A DNA stretch of 38,249 nt, taken from assembly GCA_002104945.1 (NCBI GenBank), contig MCFH01000118.1, positions 1 through 38,249 of the forward strand, written 5' to 3'. Made by a program: the position numbers and the translations under genes. Positions within the stretch are counted from its first letter, which is position 1, and each line of letters starts with the position of its first letter. Origin of the DNA: Piromyces finnis finn (taxonomy: Eukaryota > Fungi > Neocallimastigomycota). Shown here one piece after another: positions 3,072 through 32,844 of the stretch. The notes under the pieces were generated by a model. The model was not told where the DNA came from and did not search any database. It was given only the letters and a program-made list of their open reading frames with translations.

Positions 3072-3982
3072 TGACCTTTTCTGGCCTTTTGTTTGTTTTC
3101 TTCTACTATGGCACTCAGCTTAGGACAATGATATTGAAAGTGTCCCTTCTCGTTGCAAAAGTAGCAAGTTTTGATAGTTAAGTTTCTCATTTTCTCCGTC
3201 AACTCATTCATAGGATCTTTCTTATCATTACCATAATTCGCTATTGTTGGCTTCTTGTTCCTTTCATAGCTATCTTCTTTTCTTTCATATTTATTTTTAT
3301 ATCTTTTATCAGAGTTAGAAGAGGTGGATACATCATAATTGTTAGCTTTATGACGATTTCTTAAATTTAGTCTGTCCCCATCTTCGGCAAGCTTGTAGGC
3401 TTCTGCTAAGGTAACTTCTTTTTCCCTACGCACATTTTCCCAGGCTTTATAGTTAGGCTCAATGGAATCTAAGTAATCTTCAACATCTACTTTCCTTCTA
3501 CGCTTCTTGTCTAGTTTGACATACAAGGAACGGTACCTTATGTTGAAGTCTTTTACTTTTTCATTCTTTTTGATTCGCATATCCCTAAGCTCCTTGAGAA
3601 GTTCTATTTGATCTTCCTTTACTCCATAAAATTCTTCTAACATAGTGACTATCTTTTTAAGGGAAGGGTAGTGAGCTCTTCTCTTTCCTCTACCTTCATC
3701 TTCTTCATCACTATCTTCACTGTCTTCATCACTTTCGAAGTCCTTATTAGGATTCAACTCTTGAATAAGTTCATTTGGTGTTCCTGTAGTAGTAAACAAA
3801 CAAGCTAGAAACACCATTTTTGGACTTTTAACATCTTGAAGCATAGTCCAATACTTTAATTGACTATACCAAGTCTTAATGTCCAAATTATCTTCGGTTA
3901 ATCTAGTGACATGCTTTAATTCCTTCATTAATTTAGCAAAGTCAATAGATTTATCAGCTCCCGTACTCATTTTTATATACAA
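3062..3982 (-). CDS. gag: Element A Gag with C-terminal CCHC zinc knuckle
   Basis: 306-aa ORF with CYFCNEKGHFQYHC and a capsid-like DFNIRYRSL segment, directly upstream of pol. Confidence 0.92.
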   Translation of the reverse strand: MYIKMSTGADKSIDFAKLMKELKHVTRLTEDNLDIKTWYSQLKYWTMLQDVKSPKMVFLACLFTTTGTPNELIQELNPNKDFESDEDSEDSDEEDEGRGKRRAHYPSLKKIVTMLEEFYGVKEDQIELLKELRDMRIKKNEKVKDFNIRYRSLYVKLDKKRRRKVDVEDYLDSIEPNYKAWENVRREKEVTLAEAYKLAEDGDRLNLRNRHKANNYDVSTSSNSDKRYKNKYERKEDSYERNKKPTIANYGNDKKDPMNELTEKMRNLTIKTCYFCNEKGHFQYHCPKLSAIVEENKQKARKGHLN

Positions 3983-4379: not shown

Positions 4380-5243
4380 TTAATTATGCTACGGTTCAAA
4401 TAAGATATCACAAAACACTTGAATAGTTATAAAAATAAAAATTTATTTAATTTTAATTTTTATTCATTTAATTTATTTTTGATTTTTCAATTTTTAGAAT
4501 TTTCTCAAAAATCCTCGTACTTTTTCCAACTATCCATTATTTGAAATTTAATGGTTTTGGATAGCTAAGGATTTAAATTGATTTCATTCATAATATATGG
4601 ATCATTCACTGTAACATATATTAATTAAATCCTTAATATATATTATGAATAATCTCTTAATATTTGAATAGAAAAATTTTTAATTTATAATTAATAAAAT
4701 TTTAATTTATGATATGTGTAACATTTTTGCATATCATATATTATATATTTAATTATGACATATAATAAAATTATATTATTCAATTAATTATGCCCTTTTT
4801 TAGACATAAATAATAATTTTTCTGTCGAGGTATCTTCTGTTTTGTGTGTAACAGTTGCCTCTTTTAGTAAAAATTATAATTAAATTCTATGTCATAATTT
4901 CAAATTATAAAATATTATACAATAAAGTTCATTAATAAAATAAACCTTAAATAATAATAAAATTCCTATAACTATTTTAATAATAAAATTTTGTAAAATT
5001 TATAAGTATAAAATATTATAAGTAATTATACTAATACTAATAATAAAGGTCTTAAATAACTATATACAAATAATATAACTATATAATAAAAATATTAATA
5101 ATTACTAGAAAAATGTATAAAAATTATATATTATAATTTTTATATTTTAAAAATAGAGTTAAACACTAGTAAGGAATATAAATAGTTGAAGGTTAATTCC
5201 TAAAATTCTAGCTAATTCAACTATTTATGTTCATTCCTTAACA
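4380..5243 (-). repeat. Probable 5' LTR of element A (~860 bp)
   Basis: Lies between the PBS and a minus-strand TG terminus that interrupts the C LTR. The partner LTR is outside the window, so boundaries are inferred. Confidence 0.6.
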
Positions 5244-5439
5244 TGAATACTAGAAATAACTAAATTGTCTTAGTGGTTAGTAGCTAAGACTTTGAGTCTG
5301 AATGACACTAGTTCGAGACCTCATAGATACTATTTTAAAAAAATTATAATTTTATTTTATTTTATTTTATTTTTAAATTTTATTTTATATGAAGATTATT
5401 GATTGGTTAAGAATTTTAAGTTGAAAAAATTTTATAAAT
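5244..5439 (+). repeat. C 5' LTR, left segment (U3)
   Basis: Matches 17870-18065 except for a C/T difference at 5244. Confidence 0.95.
5259..5336 (+). ncRNA. tRNA-Gln(UUG)-like Pol III cassette (A box, B box, T4 terminator); stems decayed; 5' LTR copy
   Basis: tRNA invariant bases fall in exact register. Identical to 17885-17962. Confidence 0.7.
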
Positions 5440-5795
5440 TGTTAAAATTATAATGAAATAATTTTATATTTTATTTACTATTAATTAATTATATAATTAT
5501 ATATTATTTAAATTTTTATGTATTAATTAAATTAATTATATGAAAAGTATAATTTTATTTAATATTATATAAATATATATTTTTTACTATTATTAAAATG
5601 TAGTTCTTTTCATAATATAAGAAAAGACATTATTAAATAACTTGTATTAAATAATAATAAATATTAATAACAAATATTAATAAATAAATAATAATAAATA
5701 AATATAAAATAATATATATACATATTATACAAATATTTATTTATAAAGTGTTGGTGTTATATAAAATATTATAATAATAATATTTAATCATAAAA
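5440..5795 (+). repeat. B 5' LTR (TG...AA termini)
   Basis: Direct repeat of 11012-11367. Confidence 0.95.
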
Positions 5796-5823: not shown

Positions 5824-8769
5824 ATGTCTAATAATAAAAATAAAAATCTACTAAGTTCAAATATGGACCCTTCTAGTTTTATAGGAAAATTCCAAATAGA
5901 ACTTAATAAAGAAAATTTTCAAGCTTGGCAGATCAAAGTCAGAGATATTTTAAGATGCTGCGGTTTGGAAGAATATATTGATGAAAATAAAACTCCAAAG
6001 ATATATATAAAGAATATATCAGAGAGTGAAAAAGAAAATTATAAAGAAGTCCCACATGAGCCTAACATGTACTATAATAAAAATGTAACAGATGAAACTC
6101 TTGCTATTGATAATAAAGTAAGAATGTTTATTAGAAGTACATTGGCACCAAAATCAGTTGAAGATGTTCAAAGTAGAACACTTACTGGTTACCAAATATG
6201 GAAAACTTTAGAAAGTATATATATAGGAAACCAATCCAGTAAGAAAACTGACCTTATTAAAGAAGTGAATAGAATGAAATACAACCCACAAGATAGTATA
6301 GCCAGTTTTGTAAATAAACTAAATTTAAAATTTGAAACATTAGAATCCATGGGAGTCCATATAGATGAAGAAGAAAAGGCCGCCGTTTTATACAGAGCTA
6401 TGCCAAAACAATACCAATGGATAAATATATTCGATTATGAAGGTAACTGGACTTTATGTAGAGAATATGTATCAAATAGAGTTCAGTCTGTTCAAAGGTC
6501 AGAAGAAAGGGAACGAAGTAATAGGCTTGGATTTAATCAAGTTTTTAGTAGTGAAAGTGGCTATGGAAATTATGATAATTATAATCATAAAAATAATAAA
6601 TTTTCAAATTATAAAAATAAAAATAATAAAAATAAAAATGATATAATATGTCATTTTTGTAATAAAAGAGGCCACATTGAAAGAAACTGCATATTTAAAG
6701 AAAAATTAGCAAAAGAATATAATTCAAACAATAAAAATTATAAAAATAAACAAAATAAAAAATATAAAAAGAAATATGCAGATGTAGTTACAAAACAAAG
6801 AAGTAACTACAAGGATATAACACCAAATTTATTCAACGTGGATTATGATTCTACATATGAAAAAGAATCAAACAGTGTTGTAAAAGTAAATTTTTCAAAT
6901 AAAAAATATAAAAAGGTTATAAAATCAAAAGGGAACTTTAGTATGTGGATGCTAGATTCAGGAGCATCAGTTCACCTTACAAACGATATTAAATTATTAT
7001 ATAAAATTAAAAGACATAAAGAACCAATTTACTATGCGGATGGTGAAGTTGGTTATTCTACACATATAGGCAACATAAAAGGCTACTTTAATAAAGAACA
7101 AATAATTTTAAAAAATGTTTTATATGTTCCAGATATTAAAAGGAATTTAATATCTATTTCAAATTTTGTTAAAGAAGGTCTTAATGTAAATTTTAAATAT
7201 ATAAATAATGCTGCCACAGCATTTATCCAAGATAAAAATAAAAATAATATATATGTATCAAGAGAAGATGAACATAACATATTTAATGTTTATATATCAA
7301 AGACAAAATTATTTAACTACCAAATACAAAATCCAATGTATTGTTATTCAATTAGGAAGTTAAATAATGATGAAAAATTACATCTTTGGCATAGAAGATT
7401 AGGTCATTTTCATGCCAAAAGTATTGAAAATAAATTATTAAATATAAACATTAAAGATATTTGTGAAACATGTTCATTATCAAAATTAAAAAATCAACCA
7501 TATCATAGTTCTACTAATAAAAGTACAGAAGTACTTCAATTAGTACATACTGATATAGTTGGACCCATTAACGCGTCATCTATATACGGTAATCATTATT
7601 TTATTACCTTTTTAGATGATTATTCAAGATATGGATGGGTAATTTTTATAAAAAATAAAAGTGACGCGTTTAACGCGTTTAAAATATGGTATAATAAAGT
7701 TACCAATGAATTTAAAAAGAATATTACATATTTAAGAAGTGATAATGGTACAGAATATAAGTCTTTAAATTTTAAAAATTTTTGTGATACTCATGGTATT
7801 ACACAACAATTCACTGTACCATATAATCCACAACAAAATGGACGCGCTGAAAGGTTTAATGGAGTACTAATCCATGCAGCTACCACTATGATGCAAGATG
7901 CTAAATTATGTAGAAGATTCTGGGAAGACGCAGTCAGAACTGCCAATTATATACATAACAGGTTACCTCACAATGGAAATGACTTGAAGGTACCCTATGA
8001 AATGTTATATAATATCCCAGTAGACTACAGTAAATTTCGTGTTTTTGGATGTAAAGTGTTACATCTTAAACGTAACACTGAAAAACACAAATTTGAAAGC
8101 ACTTCGCTACCTGGCATATTTATTGGTTATGATGACACTTCTACCGGATTCAGAATTTTTGACTTAAATTCTTTTAAAATTGTCATCAAAAGAGTAGTTG
8201 AATTTTTAGAAGACCAACCAGGTAATTTTAATTTTGATGATAACGTCAAAAATGTCAATTTCATCGATTATGATTCATTAATCAATGAAATGGAGGGGGA
8301 CGATAACGAAAGTCTTCAACAGGACATAGAAATTGGCATATCATCAAACATTAATAACAATGATTTTCCAAATAATTTTAATAAAATAAAATATAATGCC
8401 AACAATAACTATATCGGCATTAATAGTAATAATAATAAGGATAATATTATTTATAACAATAATAATAAAGAAAACATTAAAAATTATAACATAAATGAAA
8501 ATAACAATTTAAATATAAATAACAATTTAAATATAAATAACAATTTAAATGAAAATAACAATTTAAATGAAAATAATATTTTAAAAGAAAATAACGATTT
8601 AAACACAAATAATAATTTAAATGAAAATAATAATTTAAATGAAAATAACAATTCAAATAAAAACAATAATTCAAATGAAAACGATAATCCAAATAAAAAC
8701 AATATTTCAGATGAAAATAATAATTCAAATGAAAGTAATGATTTAAATAAAAATAAAATAAAAAAATAA
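5824..8769 (+). CDS. B polyprotein part 1: Gag (CCHC), protease, GAG-pre-integrase, integrase, Asn-rich linker
   Basis: CHFCNKRGHIERNC, WMLDSGASVHL, HLWHRRLGH...CETC, LVHTDIVGP, LRSDNGTEY, NGRAERFN. Confidence 0.95.
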   Translation: MSNNKNKNLLSSNMDPSSFIGKFQIELNKENFQAWQIKVRDILRCCGLEEYIDENKTPKIYIKNISESEKENYKEVPHEPNMYYNKNVTDETLAIDNKVRMFIRSTLAPKSVEDVQSRTLTGYQIWKTLESIYIGNQSSKKTDLIKEVNRMKYNPQDSIASFVNKLNLKFETLESMGVHIDEEEKAAVLYRAMPKQYQWINIFDYEGNWTLCREYVSNRVQSVQRSEERERSNRLGFNQVFSSESGYGNYDNYNHKNNKFSNYKNKNNKNKNDIICHFCNKRGHIERNCIFKEKLAKEYNSNNKNYKNKQNKKYKKKYADVVTKQRSNYKDITPNLFNVDYDSTYEKESNSVVKVNFSNKKYKKVIKSKGNFSMWMLDSGASVHLTNDIKLLYKIKRHKEPIYYADGEVGYSTHIGNIKGYFNKEQIILKNVLYVPDIKRNLISISNFVKEGLNVNFKYINNAATAFIQDKNKNNIYVSREDEHNIFNVYISKTKLFNYQIQNPMYCYSIRKLNNDEKLHLWHRRLGHFHAKSIENKLLNINIKDICETCSLSKLKNQPYHSSTNKSTEVLQLVHTDIVGPINASSIYGNHYFITFLDDYSRYGWVIFIKNKSDAFNAFKIWYNKVTNEFKKNITYLRSDNGTEYKSLNFKNFCDTHGITQQFTVPYNPQQNGRAERFNGVLIHAATTMMQDAKLCRRFWEDAVRTANYIHNRLPHNGNDLKVPYEMLYNIPVDYSKFRVFGCKVLHLKRNTEKHKFESTSLPGIFIGYDDTSTGFRIFDLNSFKIVIKRVVEFLEDQPGNFNFDDNVKNVNFIDYDSLINEMEGDDNESLQQDIEIGISSNINNNDFPNNFNKIKYNANNNYIGINSNNNKDNIIYNNNNKENIKNYNINENNNLNINNNLNINNNLNENNNLNENNILKENNDLNTNNNLNENNNLNENNNSNKNNNSNENDNPNKNNISDENNNSNESNDLNKNKIKK
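8491..8760 (+). repeat. 18-bp imperfect tandem repeat encoding (NNNLNE/I)n
   Basis: Repeated AATAACAATTTAAATGAA-type units in frame. Confidence 0.85.
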
Positions 8770-8789
8770 AAATAAAATAAAAAATAAAA

Positions 8790-10951
8790 ATAATAATACA
8801 AAAGAAGATAATAATTTAAATAAAACAAATAAAAATATTAATGAAATATATGATGATAATGATATTAATAACATAAATCATATAAATAAATTTAATGATA
8901 ATAATGACGATAACAACGTTAATATTATTAATTCACATAATAAGAATAATATAAATAATAATATAAATAATAACTTCATTAATAATATGAAAGACAATAA
9001 CAGTTATAAAATTAAAAACAACAATAATAATATTCATAAAAAGAAAAATAAAAGAAAAGTAATCGACAGTGACGAAGAAAGTGAAGATGAAAGTAAAATT
9101 AAAATTAAAAGAAATAAATTCTTAAACAAAGAAGAAAGGATAAATAAAATAATTGAAAGCGAAAGAAAATCTAAGAACAAAATTTCTTATAAGGCTAAAG
9201 ACTTGGACAATGGAATTAGTTTATCAGAATTAAATAAAAATAAACAAAAAAATAATAACTCATTAAGCTATATTCCAAACCATTCACTAGATGTAGAACA
9301 AAGACAATATCCAAATTATCCAAGGAACAAAAGAAAAATTTTGGATAATAATGAAAAGTATACAACTAGTAAAAGAATAAGAAAAGAAATAAATAACGTT
9401 GATAAATCATCAACGACAGATAACCAAATAACAGAACCAACAAGTTTTTTTGAAATCTTTAAGAGAAAAGATAAAAGAAGATGGCTTGACGCTATAAATG
9501 ATGAATTAAACAATATGAAAGAACGCAAAGTATATGAAAAAATAAACAAAGTTCCACAAAATACTAATGTAATTACCTCAAAATGGGTGTTCAAAATTAA
9601 AAGGGATAGCAAAGGAAACATTACCAAGTATAAAGCACGCTTAGTAGCTAGAGGATTCACTCAAGAATACGGTACGGACTACAAAGAAACATTTTCTCCA
9701 ACATTAAAACATGATTCACTAAGAATTCTTACAGCTATTTCAGCAGAAAAGAAATTTTATATACATCAATTAGATATAAAGGCAGCTTATTTATATGCTG
9801 ACTTAAATGAATGTATTTATATGTATGCTCCAGAAGGAGACTCTACTTACCGAAAAGGCTATTGGAAACTAAATAAGGCACTCTATGGTCTCAAGCAAGC
9901 AGCACGAGAATGGAATAATAATATAACTGATACTTTAACTAATATTGGATTTAAAAGACTGGTAAGTGAACCCTGTATTTTCGTTAAGAAAGATGATAAC
10001 AATAATATAAAATGTTTGTTAGGAATATATGTCGATGATATCCTAATATCAGGTAACAATTATGAAATAAATAAAACTAAAGAATTACTAAAGAAAAGAT
10101 ACAAAGTTACCGATATTGGATATGCAGATTTTATTATTGGAATTAAATTTGAAAAATTAAACAATGGATACTTACTTCACCAAGAAAGATACCTTAGAGA
10201 TATCTTAAGAAAATTCAACTTAGAAAACTGTAAACCTTGCAAAACACCTAAACCAGCAAACGAAGTTGATGATAAACAAGAAAAATATAACCCAACAAAG
10301 TATCGTGCAGCCATTGGTAGTTTACTATATCTTGCTATATCTACTAGACCAGACATTTTATTTTCAGTCACCAAAGCAGCCAGAAAATCACAAGAACCTA
10401 CTTTTAAAGACTGGGAGAATGTTATTCAAATTTTTAAATACCTCAAAGGAACCATTAATTACGGATTGCTCTATTCAGGCGAAGCTTCTTTAAAGACCTT
10501 TGTAGACGCAGACTACGGTAGTGACAAAGTAACCAGAAGATCAACCACCGGATTTGTTTTCTTCATGGGAAGTGGTCCCACGAGTTGGTTTTCGAAACTT
10601 CAACATTGTATTGCTACCTCTACAGCTGAGTCAGAATATTACAGCTTATGTGAGTGCGGAAAACATTCACTTTGGTATGCAAACATACTTAATGAGTTAG
10701 GGATAACTCATAAATGTACTGTAATAAACATTGACAACCAGGCAGCAATTTATAATGCTGAAAATGATACTATTAATCCAAAATCAAAACATATTGATAT
10801 TAAGTATCATAAAATAAGAGAAATGGTAAAAGAGAAAAAAATTAAATTGGAATATATCAAGTCCTTAAATAACATTGCTGATGGTTTCACAAAATATTTG
10901 GATGCTACAAAAATGTCTATTTTTAGAAATAATTTATTACATAAATATTAA
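8790..10951 (+). CDS. pol: B polyprotein part 2: linker, RT, RNase H (frame offset from part 1 within the A-rich tract 8751-8800)
   Basis: WVFKIKRD, KYKARLVARGFTQ, YVDDILI, FVDADYG, STAESEY, IDNQAA, ADGFTK. The frame is open upstream of the Met at 8987 back to about 8790. Confidence 0.93.
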
Positions 10952-11011: not shown

Positions 11012-11367
11012 TGTTAAAATTATAATGAAATAATTTTATATTTTATTTACTATTAATTAATTATATAATTATATATTATTTAAATTTTTATGTATTAATT
11101 AAATTAATTATATGAAAAGTATAATTTTATTTAATATTATATAAATATATATTTTTTACTATTATTAAAATGTAGTTCTTTTCATAATATAAGAAAAGAC
11201 ATTATTAAATAACTTGTATTAAATAATAATAAATATTAATAACAAATATTAATAAATAAATAATAATAAATAAATATAAAATAATATATATACATATTAT
11301 ACAAATATTTATTTATAAAGTGTTGGTGTTATATAAAATATTATAATAATAATATTTAATCATAAAA
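11012..11367 (+). repeat. B 3' LTR
   Basis: Direct repeat of 5440-5795, followed by TSD TAAAT. Confidence 0.95.
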
Positions 11368-11610
11368 TAAATTAATTTAAAAAATTTTTAGTATAAATAC
11401 GAGTGAATTTTCCCAAATATTTTAAAGAATCGAGATTTTATTAATAAATAATTATATTATTAAACACTAACTTATTAAGTTAAATTCTATGTGTTTTTAA
11501 TGATATTTTTATAAATTAATAATTTACAGATTATTTTAAAGTGTTAATATTACTAAGTTATTTAGTAAATATTATAATTTGTTTTATTGTTAAAGACACA
11601 TTTCTTTACA
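11368..11610 (+). repeat. C 5' LTR, right segment (TATA at 11392, probable TSS ~11432, U5, ends TTTACA)
   Basis: Matches 18061-18303 with one substitution seen. Confidence 0.95.
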
Positions 11611-11620
11611 ATAAAATCTC
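11610..11620 (+). promoter_or_regulatory. C self-priming PBS
   Basis: AATAAAATCTC is the reverse complement of GAGATTTTATT at 11432-11442, 40 nt downstream of TATAAAT. No TGG tRNA-type PBS is present. Confidence 0.8.
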
Positions 11621-11679
11621 CTTATAATATAAAAGCTTAATACCTTAGTGTTTAAGAAATTGTTATAGATAAAACTTTT

Positions 11680-12400
11680 AAGTTTTATTGTTGAAGCTTT
11701 TCTTTAAAGAAATATTTTTACTTAAAGTAGTAGAATTAGTACGCTTTAGAAGCGGTATATAATTCAAACTATAAAAAGTAAAAGATTAACGGGATCGAGT
11801 TTAACCTGTACAATAATTGGGTTGGCAGGCTCTGAGCTATTCTACTTTGAATAAGGAAGTAGGAGAATCCGAGGTACACCACGTACAAGACGCTGTAATA
11901 AGCAAGCTGGCGTGAGATTTATAGTTGTATACTATCTTTTGCTGTTTGATTATAGACCGGAAAATAGCCGGAAATGCCTTACTTTAATAAAATAATATTT
12001 CTTAATTAATACATTTTAAAATTAAGTTTTCTAATAAAACAATTTCTAATTTTTAATTATAATTATTAATTGTTAAGACAATTTATTAAAATTGTAATAA
12101 TATAAAATAATATTCTTTATAACTCCTTTAGCGTGAGAAGTTAAACTCTTATACATAATACTTCTACGTTCGGATAAGGTTGATATAGGGAAAGAAAACC
12201 TGTAATAATTTTTATTGCTAACAATAAGTTAGACACTAAAAAAAAAATTTTTACACCGTTCCTTTCTTTTATTAATTTAATTAATATTAACAATCGACTT
12301 TATACGTGTTATCGTGAAGAGCTACGAAGGACTTATTATAAAGAATAAAACAGGTTATATATTTGATGGTTTAACACTATATAATCTGGTTTATATTATT
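11680..12400 (+). ncRNA. Conserved structured 5' leader RNA of C, homologous to the F leader
   Basis: About eight co-linear conserved blocks and two hairpins with compensatory changes relative to 18370-19060 (minus strand). Confidence 0.7.
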
Positions 12401-12503
12401 ATTTAATAAAAAGATTTACTCAATTAATAAATATAATTAAATACTTTATTCTATTATTTTTACAAATTTATTAAAGCTTATTAAAGAAAACATCATAAGT
12501 ACT

Positions 12504-14700
12504 ATGGAAGAGAACGAAAACAACCACATGGATAATAATAATATTTTCGAAAACGCAACTCTTAAGGATGGTTTTGCAGGGGATCGCAGATATCTGAAGG
12601 GTTTCTTAGCTAAGGTGGAGCTAGTGTTTATGCTATATCCTGAACGGTATCAAGACGACGCAACCAAAATTCTCTATATAATATCAAGACTTTATGGGGA
12701 CGCTATGAATTGGGCTGCTACTCTTATAAACAACCATGATCCGTGTCTTAATAACTACCAAGCTTTTGTTGACAGGTTTAAGGCTTTTTATGGTTATAAC
12801 GATGCTACCTATGTTGCAAATCAAATGCTTAGAACCTTAAAACAACGCCGATTAGGAGGAATTAGAGGCTATATCTTGGAATTTAACCGCTATGCTGATG
12901 AATCAAACTGGAATGAACAAGCCAAAATGGATGCATTTATAGCTGGCCTTAATCAACAAGTTGCAGTTCGTATTTTGGAAATGTTTCCGGGTCCTAGGGA
13001 TCTTCTTTCATTACAGACTATTGCTTCAAGAATCGATTCAAGATTATCTACACATCATACCTTTTTCCCTTCTGGTTCAAACAATAACCAAAACCGAAAG
13101 AAAAGATCTTTTCATCACTCTTCAAAAATAACAAAGTCCATTACAAACAGGAATAACCATGGCCCTATCTCAAACGAAGAAAAGGAAAGAAGAAAGAAAG
13201 AAAATCTTTGTGTGTATTGTGGTGCTTCAAGTCATAAGCTTAATAATTGTCCAAAAAGAAAGAATAAAGATCGTGAAAATCCTTCACTAATATCTATTCC
13301 CACACTTATATCCGCTCCTAAAGAAGAAAACAAAACTCATAATAAAATGACAACTAAATTTAAACTTTCTTATGAACTAAATACGGATATTCTTATTGAC
13401 TCAGGATCCAAACTTAATTTAATTGATGTAGATTACTGTAACGATAATAACATTCCTTATCATGATGACGGTAACCTACCAAATATCGTTGGTATCGGTG
13501 GTCGACAATCTCTTTTTAGAATTACATCTCCTTTGAATCTTCGCTACAAAGATCATCTCTGTCGAACACAATTCTATGTAACTGATCTACCTTATTATCC
13601 TTGTATTCTTGGAATAGATTGGCTTAAAGAACACAATCCTTCTATCGATTTCACAAAGAACAAAATTTCATTTGTATCCGATTACTGTTATAATCGTTGT
13701 ATAACACTCTCCAATAATGTCCCTGAATTTCCTGAAGAAAGATCTGCTTTTCCTGCAATGGAAGATCCTTCCTACGAACCTCCGCATGATTCATTCGCTT
13801 ACCCTATATTTGTCGATAAACAAAACATCCAATCTCAAAACGAAACTAATCGTACTTGTACTATTCTCTGTTCGGGTTCTTCAAAAAATATTAACAATTC
13901 TGTTTCTAAGAAGTCTTCTGTTAACTTTTCTACTTCGTCTCTCTCAAATCAAGAACCAACTTCTGTTTTGACTTCTTTTTCTGATTCTAATATTCATTCC
14001 AATTCTATTCTCAAATCCGATTCAAACTCTAAATCAGAACCCAATTCTTCTATTATACTTCCGGATGTTCTCTCTGACTTTGCTGATGTCTTCAATGAAT
14101 CTAATGCTGAAAAACTTCCTCCACACCGTCCATACGATTGTGAAATAAAACTCAAAGAAAATTCAAAACTGTTTTATGGACCGATTTATCCTCTAACAGA
14201 AACCGAATCAATTGCTTTAGAAGAATATATAAAAGAAAATCTCAAGAAAGGATTTATTAGAAAATCAAAATCGCCTGCGGGAGCTCCTATTCTGTTTGTA
14301 CCTAAGAAAAACGGTCAACTTCGTATGTGTGTTGACTATCGCCAATTAAACTCCATAACTATTCGTGATTCTTATCCCCTTCCTCTTATACAAGATATGC
14401 TTGAACATCTTGGAAAAGGGAAGATTTTCTCAAAATTGGATCTTCGTTCTGCCTATAACTTGGTCAGGATTAAAAGTGGTGATGAATATAAAACCGCTTT
14501 TACTTGCAAGTTAGGTCATTTTGAATACTGTGTGATGCCTTTTGGGTTGAAAAATGCACCTGCTGTTTTTCAACATTTCATTAATGATGTTCTTGAAGAC
14601 GTTCTTGGTAAATTCGCTTTCTCTTACATAGATGATATTATTATTTTTTCCTCTGATTATAAATCTCATATATCTCATGTCAAAACTGTTTTGAAACTCC
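12504..14700 (+). CDS. C polyprotein 5' part: Gag (CCHC), protease, RT N-terminal part; interrupted by the solo LTR
   Basis: CVYCGASSHKLNNC, ILIDSGS, LRMCVDYR, MPFGL, YIDDIII. Confidence 0.95.
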
Positions 14701-15303
14701 TGTAAAGATATCAAACGCCTCTGTTTGATATCTTTAATGTAACTTAAGCCACAAGTATTATTGTTTAAGTTACACAAATTATATTCAGAAAAAGAAAATG
14801 AGACATAATTTATTTATTAATAATTAAAGTTTAAAACAAAATAAATTATTAATTTATTTTTAATGTTTAACAAGTAAATTAATATTCTCAATTTAAATCC
14901 CTAGTTTTAGTATTGTTTTTTTATAGAAATAGATAAATAATAAATGATTAATATATCAATAATACATGGGCACATATTCAAATTAAATAGTACTTAATTT
15001 GAATTGCCAATTGTATTTTACTAAAAATAGTTATAGTTTAAATATTTATTAATAATTAAGATTTTAGTGTAGATTTTAAATAATAATATATAAGAAATAA
15101 ATAGTTATAATATAATATAAATGTATTTAGGAAAAATATAAATAGAAGATATTTTTCATCATTTTATCGATGTAATTGTTATTATTAAAATTCTATTATA
15201 ATAAAAGATATTTTTAATAAAACAATTTTTATTTTTATTTTAAATTTAGTGTTATTGTAATAGAATAGATATCCTAATCTATTCTTTCTGTGTCGCCATT
15301 ACA
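14701..15303 (+). mobile_element. Solo LTR of the D family (603 bp, TG...CA)
   Basis: TSD ACTCC at 14696-14700 and 15304-15308. It is the reverse complement of 26483-27086. Removing it restores KTVLKLLRDAG in frame. Confidence 0.96.
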
Positions 15304-17852: not shown

Positions 17853-17861
17853 GGAGGAGGA
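17853..17861 (+). promoter_or_regulatory. C polypurine tract
   Basis: GGAGGAGGA, 3 nt before the 3' LTR. Confidence 0.8.
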
Positions 17862-17864
17862 CCA

Positions 17865-18303
17865 TGTAACGAATACTAGAAATAACTAAATTGTCTTAGT
17901 GGTTAGTAGCTAAGACTTTGAGTCTGAATGACACTAGTTCGAGACCTCATAGATACTATTTTAAAAAAATTATAATTTTATTTTATTTTATTTTATTTTT
18001 AAATTTTATTTTATATGAAGATTATTGATTGGTTAAGAATTTTAAGTTGAAAAAATTTTATAAATTAATTTAAAAAATTTTTAGTATAAATACGAGTGAA
18101 TTTTCCCAAATATTTTAAAGAATCGAGATTTTATTAATAAATAATTATATTATTAAACACTAACTTATTAAGTTAAATTCTATGTGTTTTTAATGATATT
18201 TTTATAAATTAATAATTTACAGAATATTTTAAAGTGTTAATATTACTAAGTTATTTAGTAAATATTATAATTTGTTTTATTGTTAAAGACACATTTCTTT
18301 ACA
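17865..18303 (+). repeat. C 3' LTR (439 bp, TG...CA), uninterrupted
   Basis: TGTAAC...TTTACA, matching the split 5' LTR. Confidence 0.96.
17885..17962 (+). ncRNA. tRNA-Gln(UUG)-like Pol III cassette, 3' LTR copy
   Basis: A box TGTCTTAGTGG (17892-17902), CT-TTG-AG loop (17916-17922), B box GTTCGAGAC (17937-17945), TTTT (17959-17962). Confidence 0.7.
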
Positions 18304-19178
18304 ATATATCTATATATTTTTTTTTTAATTAATTATTATTTAAAAACTTATTTCTTTTTATAAAAATATAAGCCAACCTATATAATGTTAAACCATCAAG
18401 TATTATAGGTTGTGTAATTCTAAGTGAAAATCCCTCGTAGCTCTTTGATGATAAGCCACAAATATACCCGATGGTTAATATTAAATATAATTTAATAAAA
18501 GGAAGTAACGTAATTAATTTCTTTATTATCACTAACTTAATTAGCGGAAAGAAAATAATTGATTATCTTCCCCAATTATCAGATATAATTGAACACCAAA
18601 GTATTACGTACAGCAGTTTAACTTGCCACGCTAAGGGTCACTTTCGAATTATTTATTTATATTTTAAAAAGAATAATTTTTAAAAATCGTTCAATTAAAA
18701 AAAAATATTTTTTTTTTTTTTAAAAAATTATAAATACTAAAATAATATTTAATTTATTAAAAATTTGAATTACAATAATAAGTATAGTAGAACAGCATTT
18801 CACAGCAATTTTCCAATACTTATTTAGGGTGCTTAAGTAGTTCACAATTGCCCAGCTTACCGTATTACCAGTGTCATGTAGCAATTATGCGAGGCACTTC
18901 TATTTCTCTAGCAAAATAGAAAGGTTCAGCGCTTTCCAGTATCCTACTGTGAAAGATAAACTAGACCTAAAAACTTAACCACTAATTCCTAAATAAGTAC
19001 TGCTTCTAAAGCGTACTAATTCAGTTCTACTAAAATATTATACCTTAAAGCTTCAACAGTAATATAAATATTACCTATAACTTTGAAGGGTAATAAATTT
19101 TTAAGAAATTTATATAATATTTTAGTAATATTTTAATATTACTTTATCCTATGTATTAATAATTTTTATTAATATTAT
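18304..19178 (-). other. 5' leader of orphan element F, truncated by C shortly before the expected gag start
   Basis: Follows a PBS and is co-linear with the C leader in opposite orientation. Confidence 0.75.
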
Positions 19179-19196
19179 TCCCCGATATCTCCACCA
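19179..19196 (-). promoter_or_regulatory. tRNA-Ala PBS of element F
   Basis: Identical 18-mer to 4362-4379. Confidence 0.85.
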
Positions 19197-21055
19197 ATTT
19201 TTATGTTACGGTTCGAGGAATTTACTTTTATTTATAAAATATTAATAAATTTATTAATACTCAAAAATAATATTAAAATGAAATAAGAAAAATTGTTTTA
19301 TTAATAAAATTGTTTTATTAAGATATTAATATAAAATTATAAAATAAAATATAAAAAAAAATAAAAATATCTGTATATTCTCTAATTCTTATAATATACA
19401 CCTTTTTATACTTTTTGTAAAAAATTAAGTAGTATTAATTAAAAGAATTAGTCTTTAATTATTTACATTAATTTTAGTATTTAAATTACTTTTAAATGAA
19501 TAATAAAATTACATTACTATTGTAACGAAATATTATAATAATAAACACACACACTCTAATGTATCAAATATATATGTATTTTTTTAATAATGTTTATTTA
19601 TTAAATTTATTATTATAATACGACTAACTCGCTAGGTCAGTGTATTATCAAACTAAAGACGAAACAAAAAAAACTAATTTTTATTAATTATTAATAAAAA
19701 CACTAAAGAACTATTTATCTTTCTTATTCTCTCTTTATATATGAAAATTTTTTTTTTTTAATACAATTTGATAAGTGAATTAATTACTTAATGATTGGTT
19801 ATAAAAATATAATTATGAAATTTTCATTAATCTAACCTTAATGATTTTCTAGTCTAACCCTTATCATTAGATATACCTCATTACAACTATTATAATAAAT
19901 ATTTATACATATTATTAAATTGATTAACATACATTAAAAGTTTACTTTAAATATATTTAACTAAAGAATTTTACTATTTTACAGAAATATTATTCATAAT
20001 TTTAATTAATAAAAATTCATTAACTTGATAAATTAAACTAAAAGTTCAATAAACTATAATTTTCAATATATTATTATTACTAAATTAATTTTTAAGTTTA
20101 ATAAAATAAAATTTAAGTTCAATAAAAATAATTATTAATAATTTTAAATATAATTTAAGTGTATACATTAATTTACAATTAAGAATATTGTAAAGTTTTC
20201 ATACATTTAGGAACAATAATGAATGGATTAGGTCATAATCATTAATTATGACAAGAATAACATTATTTGTTGGTTCCTTAACAACAATGATGCAATATAT
20301 TTCAAAAACACCATAAATAAAATATAATTATGAACGTTAGCAATAGGGAATGATATATGAATAATATATTAGTTAATATTGTATTTATTTCTATTTTATA
20401 ATAATAAAAATAAATAATAAAAATAATAAATTTTATAATAATATAATTAAATAGATTTTGGTTTAAAGATTCTTTATTTAATTATTATTATTATTATGAT
20501 TATAACATTAATAACATTCAATACTAATAGGATCGAAAATTATTATTGAATAAATATAAATAGTTAAATATAATGTGTAAATATAAAAATATGTTGATGA
20601 AAGTATTATTAATGATAAAATATAACTTTTCTGAAATAGTAAAAATAAACAATAAATATTCTTTTCTTTTATAACTAATATTTAAACTGAAGGAAATATA
20701 ATAAATACTAAATACGTAATTATTAACCTAAAACTAACTTAAACTAAAACTATTAATATAAAAATAAAATAAAATAAAACTAATACTTAAAACTAAAATA
20801 TCAAATATTATTTATAAATGAAAAGTTCTCTCTCTTGATATCTTCTGCTTTAACACTCTCTTTTATATCTTTTCCTTTCTTGTGTAACTAATTATTCTAA
20901 TGTATGTGTAACATTTGCGTCATAATAATTTATACTAATATAGTTTAATTATTATTATCATTAGTAATTGATATACAATTTATAAAAGGATTAGATATTA
21001 TTCATAAAATATTTAAAATATTATATTTTTCTATGCATCTTGTATCAACAATAAC
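19197..21055 (-). other. Probable 5' LTR of F, possibly plus unrelated AT-rich sequence; outer boundary unresolved
   Basis: Lies upstream of the PBS. Shares the U5-end motif GAACCGTARCA and short motifs (TGTTACACA, CAGAAGATA) with the A LTR. No partner copy in the window. Confidence 0.4.
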
Positions 21056-31901: not shown

Positions 31902-31940
<39 letters not shown>

Positions 31941-31949
31941 CTTTGCTAG

Positions 31950-32197
31950 GGTAGCAACAAAGTTTCTTCAATACTCTCTTGAACCAAGGTAGCAACAAAG
32001 TTTCTTCAATACTCTCTTGAACCAAGGTAGCAACAAAGTTTCTTCAATACTCTCTTGAACTAAGGTAGCAACAAAGTTTCTTCAATAATCTCTTGAACCA
32101 AGGTAGCAACAAAGTTTCTTCAATAATCTCTTGAACCAAGGTAGCAACAAAATTTCTTCAATAATCTCTTGAACCAAGGTAGCAACAAAGTTTCTTC
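31950..32197 (-). repeat. 38-bp tandem repeat, 6.5 copies, in the D leader
   Basis: Units start at 31950, 31988, 32026, 32064, 32102, 32140 and 32178 (partial). No spacers. Confidence 0.95.
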
Positions 32198-32234
32198 GGG
32201 CGGTAGATATCCTAACGTACTCTTGAATAGTTAG

Positions 32235-32246
32235 GTAATTGTTATT
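32235..32246 (-). promoter_or_regulatory. D self-priming PBS
   Basis: Minus-strand AATAACAATTAC is complementary to the LTR site at 32366-32377, about 35 nt downstream of TATAAAT. Confidence 0.8.
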
Positions 32247-32844
32247 GTAATGCTGACACAGAAAGAATAGATTAGGATATCTATTCTATTACAATAACAC
32301 AAAATTTAAAATAAAATAAAAAATTGTTTTATTAAAAATATCTTTTATTATAATAGAAATTTATTAATAACAATTACATCGATAAAATGATGAAAAATAT
32401 CTTCTATTTATATTTTCCTAAATACATTTATATTATATTATAACTATTTATTTCTTATATATTATTATTTAAAATCTACACTAAAATCTTAATTATTAAT
32501 AAATATTTAAACTATAACTATTTTTAGTAAAATACAATTGGCAATTCAAATTAAGTACTATTCAATTTGAATATGTGCCCATGTATTATTGATATATTAA
32601 TCATTTATATTTATTTATTTCTATGAAAAAACAATACTAAAACTAGGGATTTAAATTGAGAATATTAATTTACTTGTTAAACATTAAAAATAAATTAATA
32701 ATTTATTTTGTTTTAAACTTTATTATTAATAAATAATTATGTCTCATTTTCTTTTTCTGAATATAATTTGTGTAACTTAAACAATAATACTTGTGGCTTA
32801 AGTTACATTAAAGATATCAAACAGAGGCGTTTGATATCTTTACA
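32246..32844 (-). repeat. D 5' LTR (599 bp)
   Basis: TG...CA; repeat of 26483-27086. Confidence 0.96.

What the first reader, a model, noticed from the sequence alone, without database searches (positions are those of the whole stretch)
11680..12400. A ~750-nt structured leader RNA shared by two differently primed retrotransposons
The C leader (+) and F leader (18370-19060, -) are co-linear through about eight conserved islands separated by divergent AT spacers. Examples are an identical 21-mer GAATTAGTACGCTTTAGAAGC (11733-11753/19002-19022), CYTTAGCGTG..AAGTTAAACT and AAGAGCTACGA. Two hairpins covary: TTCTACTT/AAGTAGGA versus TTCTATTT/AAATAGAA (11840-11864/18898-18921), and CAGGTTATA/TATAATCTG versus CAACCTATA/TATAGGTTG around a conserved TTGATGGTTTAAC apex (12351-12388/18374-18412). 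This is the signature of a large functional RNA, which I cannot match to a known family; candidates are an IRES, a packaging or dimerisation domain, a ribozyme or a captured ncRNA. A conserved GCTAAY...AAGTTAG (12217-12232) also looks like a branch point plus 3' splice site, so a conserved leader intron is an alternative.
Basis: partly seen in the sequence, partly recalled or inferred. Interest (0 to 1): 0.87.

Follow-up and report, generated by a model that had tools for sequence, protein, structure and literature searches.

The report
Modular folded leader RNA with kissing loops
The long untranslated leaders of several unrelated jumping genes (LTR retrotransposons) of an anaerobic gut fungus carry the same folded RNA cassettes. 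One cassette has two hairpins whose tips always stay complementary to each other, which is the kind of contact retrovirus-like elements use to pair and package their RNA genomes.

Summary
The C leader (11611-12503, +) and the F leader (19190-18307, -) share two separable cassettes: M5 (about 11686-11978) and M (about 12111-12390).

M also occurs in families G, F' and H of this genome, and in four further elements from other public samples. An 8-sequence alignment (54-68% identity) gives a consensus fold of -37 kcal/mol, against -0.7 for column shuffles. It has 75 pairs, 46 of them with compensatory changes, and the sense strand folds better than the antisense.

The main new result is a loop-loop pairing. 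The 7-nt loop of hairpin 1 (12140-12146) is complementary to the loop of hairpin 2 (12369-12375). Five different loop pairs keep this complementarity: 48 of 49 cells pair, and 5 of 7 positions change on both sides.

The leaders are strongly depleted of ATG, and RNA-like contigs run through them unspliced. They are therefore scanned 5' UTRs, not introns or IRESs. Rfam has no match.

My best reading is a retrovirus-type dimerisation/packaging domain, closest to the Ty1 SL1a-SL3a kissing model, exchanged as cassettes between distant Ty3/gypsy lineages. The structure is shown; the function is inferred.

First readers noted the same leaders on other pieces of this genome (s1-176536, s1-185468, s1-182226, s1-190361).

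The parts
11367..11610 (+). 3' part of the 5' LTR of chromovirus C. The LTR is split by a copia insertion; the other part is 5245-5440.
   Evidence: Direct repeats D4/D5 match the 3' LTR 17865-18306 at 100%. The LTR ends ...TTTACA.
11612..11621 (+). Self-priming PBS (ATAAAATCTC), complementary to GAGATTTTAT at 11432-11441 in the LTR.
   Evidence: Read from the sequence. Family G has the covarying pair GAGTTTTTAT / ATAAAAACTC.
11686..11978 (+). Cassette M5. It holds the invariant 18-21-mer (11733-11753), a closed domain with a long-range helix (11753-11768 with 11945-11959), hairpin 11799-11837, hairpin 11840-11864, and a conserved GAAATGC carrying a short uORF start at 11974.
   Evidence: nhmmer matches in C, C2, F, F2 and in L086 and L094 from other samples. 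RNAalifold z is -6.9 for the sense strand and -4.7 for the antisense; 18 of 53 pairs are compensatory.
11980..12110 (+). Unconserved AT-rich spacer between the cassettes.
   Evidence: No conserved columns in the alignments.
12111..12347 (+). Cassette M, a closed rod-like domain. Closing helices: 12111-12132 with 12321-12347. Helix 12161-12168/12313-12319. A 14-bp helix 12171-12184/12293-12306. Helix 12188-12194/12259-12265. Apical hairpin 12218-12232. Side hairpin 12267-12286.
   Evidence: RNAalifold on 4, 7 and 8 sequences. Single-sequence folds of C and G give the same architecture, with z -3.9 and -4.7.
12134..12151 (+). Hairpin 1 at the base of M. The stem is 12134-12138/12147-12151. The 8-nt loop carries the kissing 7-mer GTTAAAC (12140-12146).
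   Evidence: Stem pairs covary: A-T/G-C, G-C/C-G, A-T/T-A.
12351..12388 (+). Hairpin 2, just 3' of M. The arms are 12351-12361/12378-12388. The 16-nt loop carries the kissing 7-mer GTTTAAC (12369-12375).
   Evidence: Stems differ and stay paired in C, F, G, H, K82, N87 and R88. Loop complementarity to hairpin 1 is kept in 48 of 49 cells.
12504..14705 (+). Start of the gag-pol ORF of C. The first ATG after the ATG-poor leader is at 12504.
   Evidence: ORF list. Pfam hits: Ty3_capsid, Retrotrans_gag, RVT_1.
18770..19082 (-). Cassette M5 of the F copy.
   Evidence: nhmmer E 7.6e-82.
18371..18650 (-). Cassette M plus hairpin 2 of the F copy. Kissing 7-mers are at 18622-18616 and 18393-18387.
   Evidence: nhmmer E 1.6e-82; sequence read.
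19180..19196 (-). tRNA-type PBS of F (TGGTGGAGATATCGGGG).
   Evidence: Read from the sequence. It is conserved in F and F2.

Best explanation
The leader is the scanned 5' UTR of the genomic RNA of Ty3/gypsy retrotransposons. It is built from independently folding RNA cassettes.

Shown:
- Cassette M is a roughly 240-nt rod closed by long-range helices.
- Hairpin 1 sits at its base and hairpin 2 just 3' of it. Their 7-nt loop motifs are complementary and co-evolve.
- Cassette M5 is a second closed domain.
- The cassettes occur in different combinations in distant lineages.

Inferred:
- The two loops pair between two RNA molecules (hairpin 1 with hairpin 2 of the partner, and the reverse). This would nucleate genome dimerisation and mark the RNA for packaging by Gag, as proposed for Ty1 SL1a/SL3a and as in retroviral leaders.
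- The folded or dimeric form would resist scanning, so the RNA would partition between translation and packaging.
- Different loop 'codes' would keep families apart. Families that share a code (C, F, F') could co-package and recombine, which would explain the mosaic distribution of the cassettes.
For: - **Conserved fold.** Eight M sequences at 54-68% identity give a consensus energy of -37.1, against -0.7 +/- 1.0 for column shuffles. There are 75 pairs, 46 compensatory, and 89% of cells are paired. The antisense strand reaches only -17.3.
- **Kissing loops.** Five loop pairs are found: GTTAAAC/GTTTAAC, GTTGGAC/GTCCAAT, GTTGAGC/GCTCAAT, GCCAGGC/GGCTGGC and GTTGAAC/GTTCAAC. 48 of 49 cells pair, and 5 of 7 positions change on both sides. 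In the 7-sequence alignment, an unbiased scan with J78 left out found this as the only 7-column window pair with at most one unpaired cell; 0 of 300 shuffles reach 4 compensatory pairs. No mixed loop combination exists in an M copy in the genome.
- **Position.** The cassettes lie between PBS and gag.
- **ATG avoidance.** C has 2 ATG against 16.8 expected, F has 3 against 28, and G has 1 against 10.7. Other A/T/G permutations occur 6-29 times. The relatives show the same avoidance.
- **Transcripts.** RNA-like contigs run collinearly from inside the LTR through the leader into gag-pol.
- **Patchy distribution.** Pol identity is 62-75% for C-G, 51-69% for C-E and 38-52% for C-D, but only 36-41% for C-F, and the C and F gag proteins show no similarity. 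A, B, D and E nevertheless lack the cassettes. F' is a mosaic. F-like and C-like elements from other samples carry M, M5 and M3 in varying combinations.
- **Precedent.** Ty1 has complementary 7-nt apical motifs about 270 nt apart that are needed for retrotransposition (PMC5454406).
Against: - No experiment or probing data exist. Covariation cannot tell intermolecular from intramolecular loop pairing.
- One homolog (J78) does not keep the loop complementarity at the aligned columns.
- K82 has one G.G mismatch.
- M and M5 are each dispensable for proliferation. G has many copies without most of M5, and F2 has at least 3 copies without M.
- The runs used as RNA evidence are only guessed to be RNA.
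- No Gag-binding evidence.
Confidence: 0.55

Rival explanations
1. The two loops kiss within one molecule, locking M and hairpin 2 into a compact tertiary fold. That fold would serve another cis function: nuclear export or stability of an intronless RNA, control of scanning and translation, or a step of reverse transcription.
For: Both hairpins sit next to the closing helices of M, so they are close in space. Covariation is equally compatible with pairing in cis. The -61 kcal/mol domain lies in a scanned UTR and must affect translation.
Against: Nothing favours it over the dimer model. The closest studied case (Ty1) argues for intermolecular pairing. Family-specific loop codes are easier to explain by partner choice.
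Confidence: 0.27
2. The conserved islands act at the DNA level, as binding sites of an internal enhancer, promoter or insulator in the leader, as in Drosophila gypsy.
For: Islands of invariant sequence are separated by free spacers. Some invariant motifs are single-stranded in the model.
Against: 46 pairs have compensatory changes. The strand asymmetry with invariant G.U pairs points to RNA of the sense strand. The loop-loop covariation has no DNA-level rationale.
Confidence: 0.06
3. The leader is an IRES, or a shunt platform for cap-independent translation of gag.
For: It is a long and highly structured 5' UTR.
Against: ATG is specifically purged from the whole leader, including inside M. That implies linear scanning. 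IRES and shunt leaders normally tolerate many upstream AUGs. The AUG in the hairpin-2 loop is absent in K82 and N87.
Confidence: 0.05
4. Part of the leader is a conserved intron, with the branch point at GCTAAY and the acceptor at AAGTTAG.
For: The motifs resemble fungal splice signals. One low-depth contig joint runs 11757>12359 in run X2.
Against: The main contigs of three runs are collinear through the leader. The single joint has TA..AT ends and only 25 nt on its shorter side. ATG avoidance extends over the putative intron. The two motifs are the paired arms of the apical hairpin in all 8 sequences.
Confidence: 0.03
5. The shared region is a captured cellular ncRNA or a self-cleaving ribozyme.
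For: None beyond its being structured and unannotated.
Against: No Rfam family matches at E<=5. All listed genomic matches to the island pattern belong to five leader sequence types. The cassette always lies between PBS and gag.
Confidence: 0.03

Closest known systems
Ty1 (Ty1/copia) TIPIRT domain: pseudoknot with SL1a and SL3a hairpins carrying complementary 7-nt apical motifs (Gamache et al. 2017, PMC5454406)
   Same: It lies at the 5' end of an LTR-retrotransposon genomic RNA. The domain is closed by long-range helices. Two hairpins a few hundred nt apart (about 270 nt in Ty1, 229 nt here) carry non-palindromic, mutually complementary 7-nt loop motifs. The proposed role is a symmetrical two-kiss dimer that starts packaging.
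   Different: There is no sequence similarity. Ty1's domain lies mostly inside gag, whereas this one lies wholly in the 5' UTR of Ty3/gypsy elements. The evidence here is natural covariation across families, not mutagenesis. Here the domain is a portable cassette found in unrelated lineages.
Retroviral 5' leader packaging/dimerisation signals (HIV-1 DIS/Psi, MMTV and FIV long-range interactions; PMC11449360, PMC4264320, PMC2987497 as listed)
   Same: It lies between PBS and gag. The structured domain is held by long-range interactions. Dimerisation is started by loop-loop kissing, and translation competes with packaging.
   Different: Retroviral DIS loops are palindromic and pair homotypically; here two different loops pair heterotypically. 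There is no splice donor, and the leader is much longer and AT-rich.
bicoid mRNA 3' UTR domain III loop-loop dimerisation (from my own knowledge, not checked here)
   Same: Two different single-stranded loops of one RNA are complementary to each other and pair in trans.
   Different: It is a cellular mRNA localisation signal, not a retroelement, and is unrelated in sequence.
Caulimovirus 35S RNA leader (ribosome shunt; from my own knowledge, not checked here)
   Same: It is a leader of about 600-900 nt folded into a long rod upstream of the first large ORF of a reverse-transcribing element.
   Different: Shunt leaders are full of short ORFs. This leader is purged of ATG.

Membership tests
Retroelement dimerisation/packaging leader (Psi/DLS-type cis element) | Lies in the genomic RNA between PBS and gag (or at the 5' end) | tested here: met
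   The LTR ends at 11610, the PBS is at 11612-11621 and the gag ATG at 12504. The position is the same in F, G and the elements from other samples.
Retroelement dimerisation/packaging leader (Psi/DLS-type cis element) | Evolutionarily conserved RNA secondary structure with long-range closing helices | tested here: met
   z -36 against shuffles, 46 of 75 pairs compensatory, sense strand favoured over antisense.
Retroelement dimerisation/packaging leader (Psi/DLS-type cis element) | Exposed complementary loop sequences able to form a kissing complex | tested here: met
   Five covarying loop pairs, 48 of 49 cells paired. Whether they pair in trans is not testable here.
Retroelement dimerisation/packaging leader (Psi/DLS-type cis element) | Required in cis for RNA dimerisation and encapsidation; bound by Gag/NC | not testable with these tools
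   Needs biochemistry or genetics.
Ty1 TIPIRT domain (homology) | Sequence or model similarity to the Ty1 5' domain | tested here: not met
   No sequence relation was seen. The elements are Ty3/gypsy by Pfam, and Rfam gives no match. The resemblance is functional and architectural only.
IRES | Leader that need not be scanned, so upstream AUGs are tolerated | tested here: not met
   ATG occurs 2, 3 and 1 times against 17, 28 and 11 expected.
Spliceosomal leader intron | GT-AG junction present in transcripts | tested here: not met
   Contigs are collinear through the leader. The only joint has TA..AT ends, low depth and a short side. The runs are only guessed to be RNA.
Any Rfam family (ribozymes, snRNA, SRP, etc.) | Covariance-model match | tested here: not met
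   Zero matches at gathering score over the window, and zero at E<=5 over both leaders.

The most novel reading that the evidence does not exclude
The hairpin-1/hairpin-2 loop pair is an evolvable, family-specific 'dimerisation code'. It would decide which retrotransposon RNAs are co-packaged. Lineages that share a code (C, F, F') would form heterodimers, and template switching in those particles would move whole leader cassettes (M5, M, M3) between otherwise unrelated Ty3/gypsy lineages. This would make a modular, horizontally exchanged packaging system within one genome.
Probability: 0.33. Interest if true: 0.8.

Novelty: new variant of a known kind. Interest (0 to 1): 0.66.

Why it matters
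Little is known about how LTR retrotransposons other than Ty1 select and dimerise their RNA. For Ty3/gypsy chromoviruses I found no described leader structure in the held literature.

Natural variation here gives five compensating versions of a heterotypic kissing-loop pair. This amounts to a ready-made mutational series that makes the Ty1-type two-kiss model directly testable in a second superfamily.

The cassette-like distribution across lineages with unrelated gag genes also offers a concrete system for asking how packaging specificity and recombination between retroelement families are coupled.

Finally, it defines at least two, and probably three, new RNA families for Rfam-type annotation of anaerobic-fungal genomes.

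Tried and rejected
- **Rfam.** No match at gathering score over the window or at E<=5 over both leaders. No tRNA genes.
- **Metagenome pattern scan.** The scan for three invariant islands returned 10 loci, all GC-rich, unrelated chance matches.
- **Family H.** Only short pattern matches of H were seen.
- **Loop uORF.** I rejected the mini-uORF ATGGTTTAA in the hairpin-2 loop as a conserved feature, because the ATG is absent in K82 and N87.
- **J78.** It does not keep the loop pairing at the aligned columns. A 7-nt complement lies 360 nt downstream (L078:947-953), but this is not established.
- **Relatives without cassettes.** L083, L084, L085 and L095 (Piromyces sp. E2) show no cassette in the flanks available.
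- **M identity tree.** It is star-like (54-68%), so it does not date transfers.
- **Contig starts.** The starts at 11483-11544 are not taken as transcription starts.
- **The count of structure pairs.** Not used. The same counts were computed in scripts, to avoid typing long bracket strings.

Full report
**Setting**

The window is a nest of LTR retrotransposons in a 56-Mb, very AT-rich eukaryotic genome. Protein relatives are named from Orpinomyces, Piromyces and Neocallimastix, so the host is an anaerobic gut fungus.

- **Element C** is a Ty3/gypsy chromovirus. Its 5' LTR is 5245-5440 plus 11367-11610, split by a copia element. The leader is 11611-12503 and gag-pol starts at 12504. A solo LTR is inserted at 14701-15303, and the 3' LTR is 17865-18306.
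- **Element F** lies on the minus strand. Its LTR starts near 20283, a tRNA-type PBS lies at 19196-19180, and the leader runs down to 18307, where C's 3' LTR cuts it.
- **An intact F copy (L061)** has a 1370-nt leader, a 345-aa gag and a separate pol.
- **Copy number.** C and F are both young multicopy families: more than 35 and more than 26 copies at 95-100% identity.
- **Priming.** C has a Tf1-like self-priming complement (11432-11441 against 11612-11621), which covaries in its sister family G. 'Differently primed' is therefore correct.

**The observation**

The two leaders are collinear through conserved islands. The homology resolves into two separable cassettes: M5 (about 11686-11978) and M (about 12111-12390). 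An unconserved AT spacer separates them. The quoted 21-mer and both hairpins are at the stated coordinates.

**Distribution**

| Element | Cassettes |
|---|---|
| C | M5 + M |
| F | M5 + M + a third cassette M3 (L061:5388-5880) |
| F2 | M5 + M3, no M |
| F' | M + M3, with an unrelated LTR |
| G (sister of C) | M only |
| H | M, context unknown |
| A, B, D, E (in the window) | none |

F' has pol 98.5% identical to F but leader and gag only 84% identical.

By pol identity, G (62-75%), E (51-69%) and D (38-52%) are all closer to C than F is (36-41%). The C and F gag proteins show no BLASTP similarity. A is F's sister at 68%.

Elements from other public samples repeat this pattern:
- C/G-like elements carry M (L082, L087), M + M3 (L078) or M5 only (L086).
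- F-like elements carry M (L088-L091), M3 (L092) or M5 + M3 (L094).
- Some relatives carry none (L083-L085, L095).

The cassettes are therefore long-standing parts of both lineages, and recombination reshuffles them.

**Structure of M**

RNAalifold on C, F, F' and G gives a closed rod-like domain plus a 3' hairpin. The consensus energy is -45.8, against -8.9 +/- 2.8 for column shuffles (z -13). The antisense strand gives -35.5.

Single-sequence folds of C and G reach the same architecture independently, with z -3.9 and -4.7.

With eight sequences at 54-68% identity, the consensus is -37.1 against -0.7 +/- 1.0, and -17.3 for the antisense. There are 75 pairs, 46 of them with changes on both sides, and 89% of cells are paired. 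Invariant G.U pairs and the sense/antisense gap point to RNA of the element's sense strand.

**Kissing loops**

Hairpin 1 is 12134-12151, with loop 7-mer 12140-12146. Hairpin 2 is 12351-12388, with loop 7-mer 12369-12375. The two loop 7-mers are exactly complementary in C and F.

| Element | Hairpin 1 loop | Hairpin 2 loop | Note |
|---|---|---|---|
| C, F, F' | GTTAAAC | GTTTAAC | fully paired |
| G | GTTGGAC | GTCCAAT | one G.U wobble |
| N87 | GTTGAGC | GCTCAAT | one G.U wobble |
| R88 | GTTGAAC | GTTCAAC | fully paired |
| K82 | GCCAGGC | GGCTGGC | one G.G mismatch |
| H | GTTAAAT | GTTTAAC | wobble |

- 48 of 49 cells pair, and five of the seven positions show changes on both sides.
- In the 7-sequence alignment, an unbiased scan of all 7-column window pairs found only this one with at most one unpaired cell. 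J78 was left out of that scan. None of 300 shuffles gave a window with 4 or more compensatory pairs.
- No M copy in the genome mixes the two codes.
- J78 is the exception. Its loops do not match at the aligned columns, and its hairpin-2 region is followed by a long A run.

**M5**

With C, F, F2 and Q86, the consensus is -33.4 against -10.9 +/- 3.3 (z -6.9); the antisense z is -4.7. A long-range helix (11753-11768 with 11945-11959) shows 9 compensatory pairs.

The 18 nt CTAGTACGCTTTAGAAGC are invariant in C, F and Q86. Support for M5 is real but weaker than for M.

**What kind of RNA region it is**

ATG is specifically purged from the leaders. C has 2 against 16.8 expected, F has 3 against 28, and G has 1 against 10.7. 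The other permutations of A, T and G occur 6-29 times. K82, J78, L084 and L085 behave alike.

The whole leader, M included, is therefore scanned by ribosomes. That argues against both an IRES and an intron.

Contigs of three runs lie collinearly from inside the LTR through the leader into gag-pol. The only joint in the leader has TA..AT ends, low depth and a 25-nt side.

The runs are only guessed to be RNA. However, the depth ratio between the E LTR and the C body differs about 30-fold between two samples of one study. That pattern fits expression rather than copy number; this is my inference.

**Mechanism**

The closest studied system is Ty1. There, two hairpins with complementary 7-nt apical motifs about 270 nt apart, nested in a long-range pseudoknot, are needed for retrotransposition. 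Compensatory mutants restore function, and a symmetrical two-kiss dimer was proposed to start packaging (PMC5454406).

By analogy I propose that M with hairpins 1 and 2 is the dimerisation/packaging domain of these Ty3/gypsy elements, and that folding or dimerisation competes with scanning.

- **Shown:** the fold, the loop covariation, the position, the scanning signature and the modular distribution.
- **Inferred:** pairing in trans, recognition by Gag, the translation/packaging switch, and code-dependent co-packaging as the route of cassette exchange.

The main rival is an intramolecular kiss serving another cis function. These tools cannot exclude it.

**Comparison and novelty**

No Rfam family matches. 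The held literature shows no description of leader structures in chromoviruses or in anaerobic-fungal retrotransposons.

The kind of element is known: a retroelement leader cis-RNA with kissing loops. New here are this RNA family, the natural series of five compensating heterotypic loop pairs, and the cassette exchange between lineages with unrelated gag genes.

First readers noted the same leaders on other pieces of this genome. I treat those notes as repeats of the same families, not as independent support.

Noticed in passing
L061:5388-5880 (intact F copy); also L066:4163-4637, L067:4735-5205, L078:962-1222, L092:69-326, L094:2353-2622: A third conserved, GC-richer leader cassette (M3) lies between M and gag in F-type elements and in one C/G-like element from another sample. 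It is absent from the window because C truncates the F copy there.
   Followed up: partly
L067 (G000:C156:954000-963999) against L061: F' is a mosaic. Its pol is 98.5% identical to F, its leader and gag are 84% identical, and its LTR is unrelated. One recombination breakpoint lies at the 5' edge of cassette M.
   Followed up: partly
window 11432-11441 and 11612-11621; L062 about 3773-3782 and 3945-3954: The Tf1-like self-priming complement of C (GAGATTTTAT / ATAAAATCTC) covaries in family G (GAGTTTTTAT / ATAAAAACTC).
   Followed up: partly
window 31908-32249 (-): The leader of element E carries seven tandem 38-nt repeats and is much less ATG-depleted (12 ATG in 1169 nt). It has no M or M5.
   Followed up: no
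window 8390-8969 (+): An array of 18-nt tandem repeats lies inside the copia element's ORF region.
   Followed up: no
window 11757>12359 (run X2): One low-depth contig joins the end of the 21-mer region to the 5' arm of hairpin 2 and skips 601 nt (TA..AT ends, 25-nt side). It is probably a template-switch or assembly artefact at a GGT(T)ATATA microhomology, or a rare deleted copy.
   Followed up: no
window 11350-12550 against 12550-14000 (run X3): The contig covering the leader has 13-fold lower word depth (51) than the contig covering gag (668). This could be AT bias, or shorter transcripts that lack the leader.
   Followed up: no
window 5233-5250 against 17860-17875: The 5' LTR of this C copy lacks the terminal TGTAAC seen at the 3' LTR. 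The flank at 5244 downward does not continue F, so the nest is not a simple insertion of C into F.
   Followed up: partly
G000:C166:486716-486969: Family H is a single-copy M homolog with loop 1 GTTAAAT. Its element context could not be fetched.
   Followed up: partly
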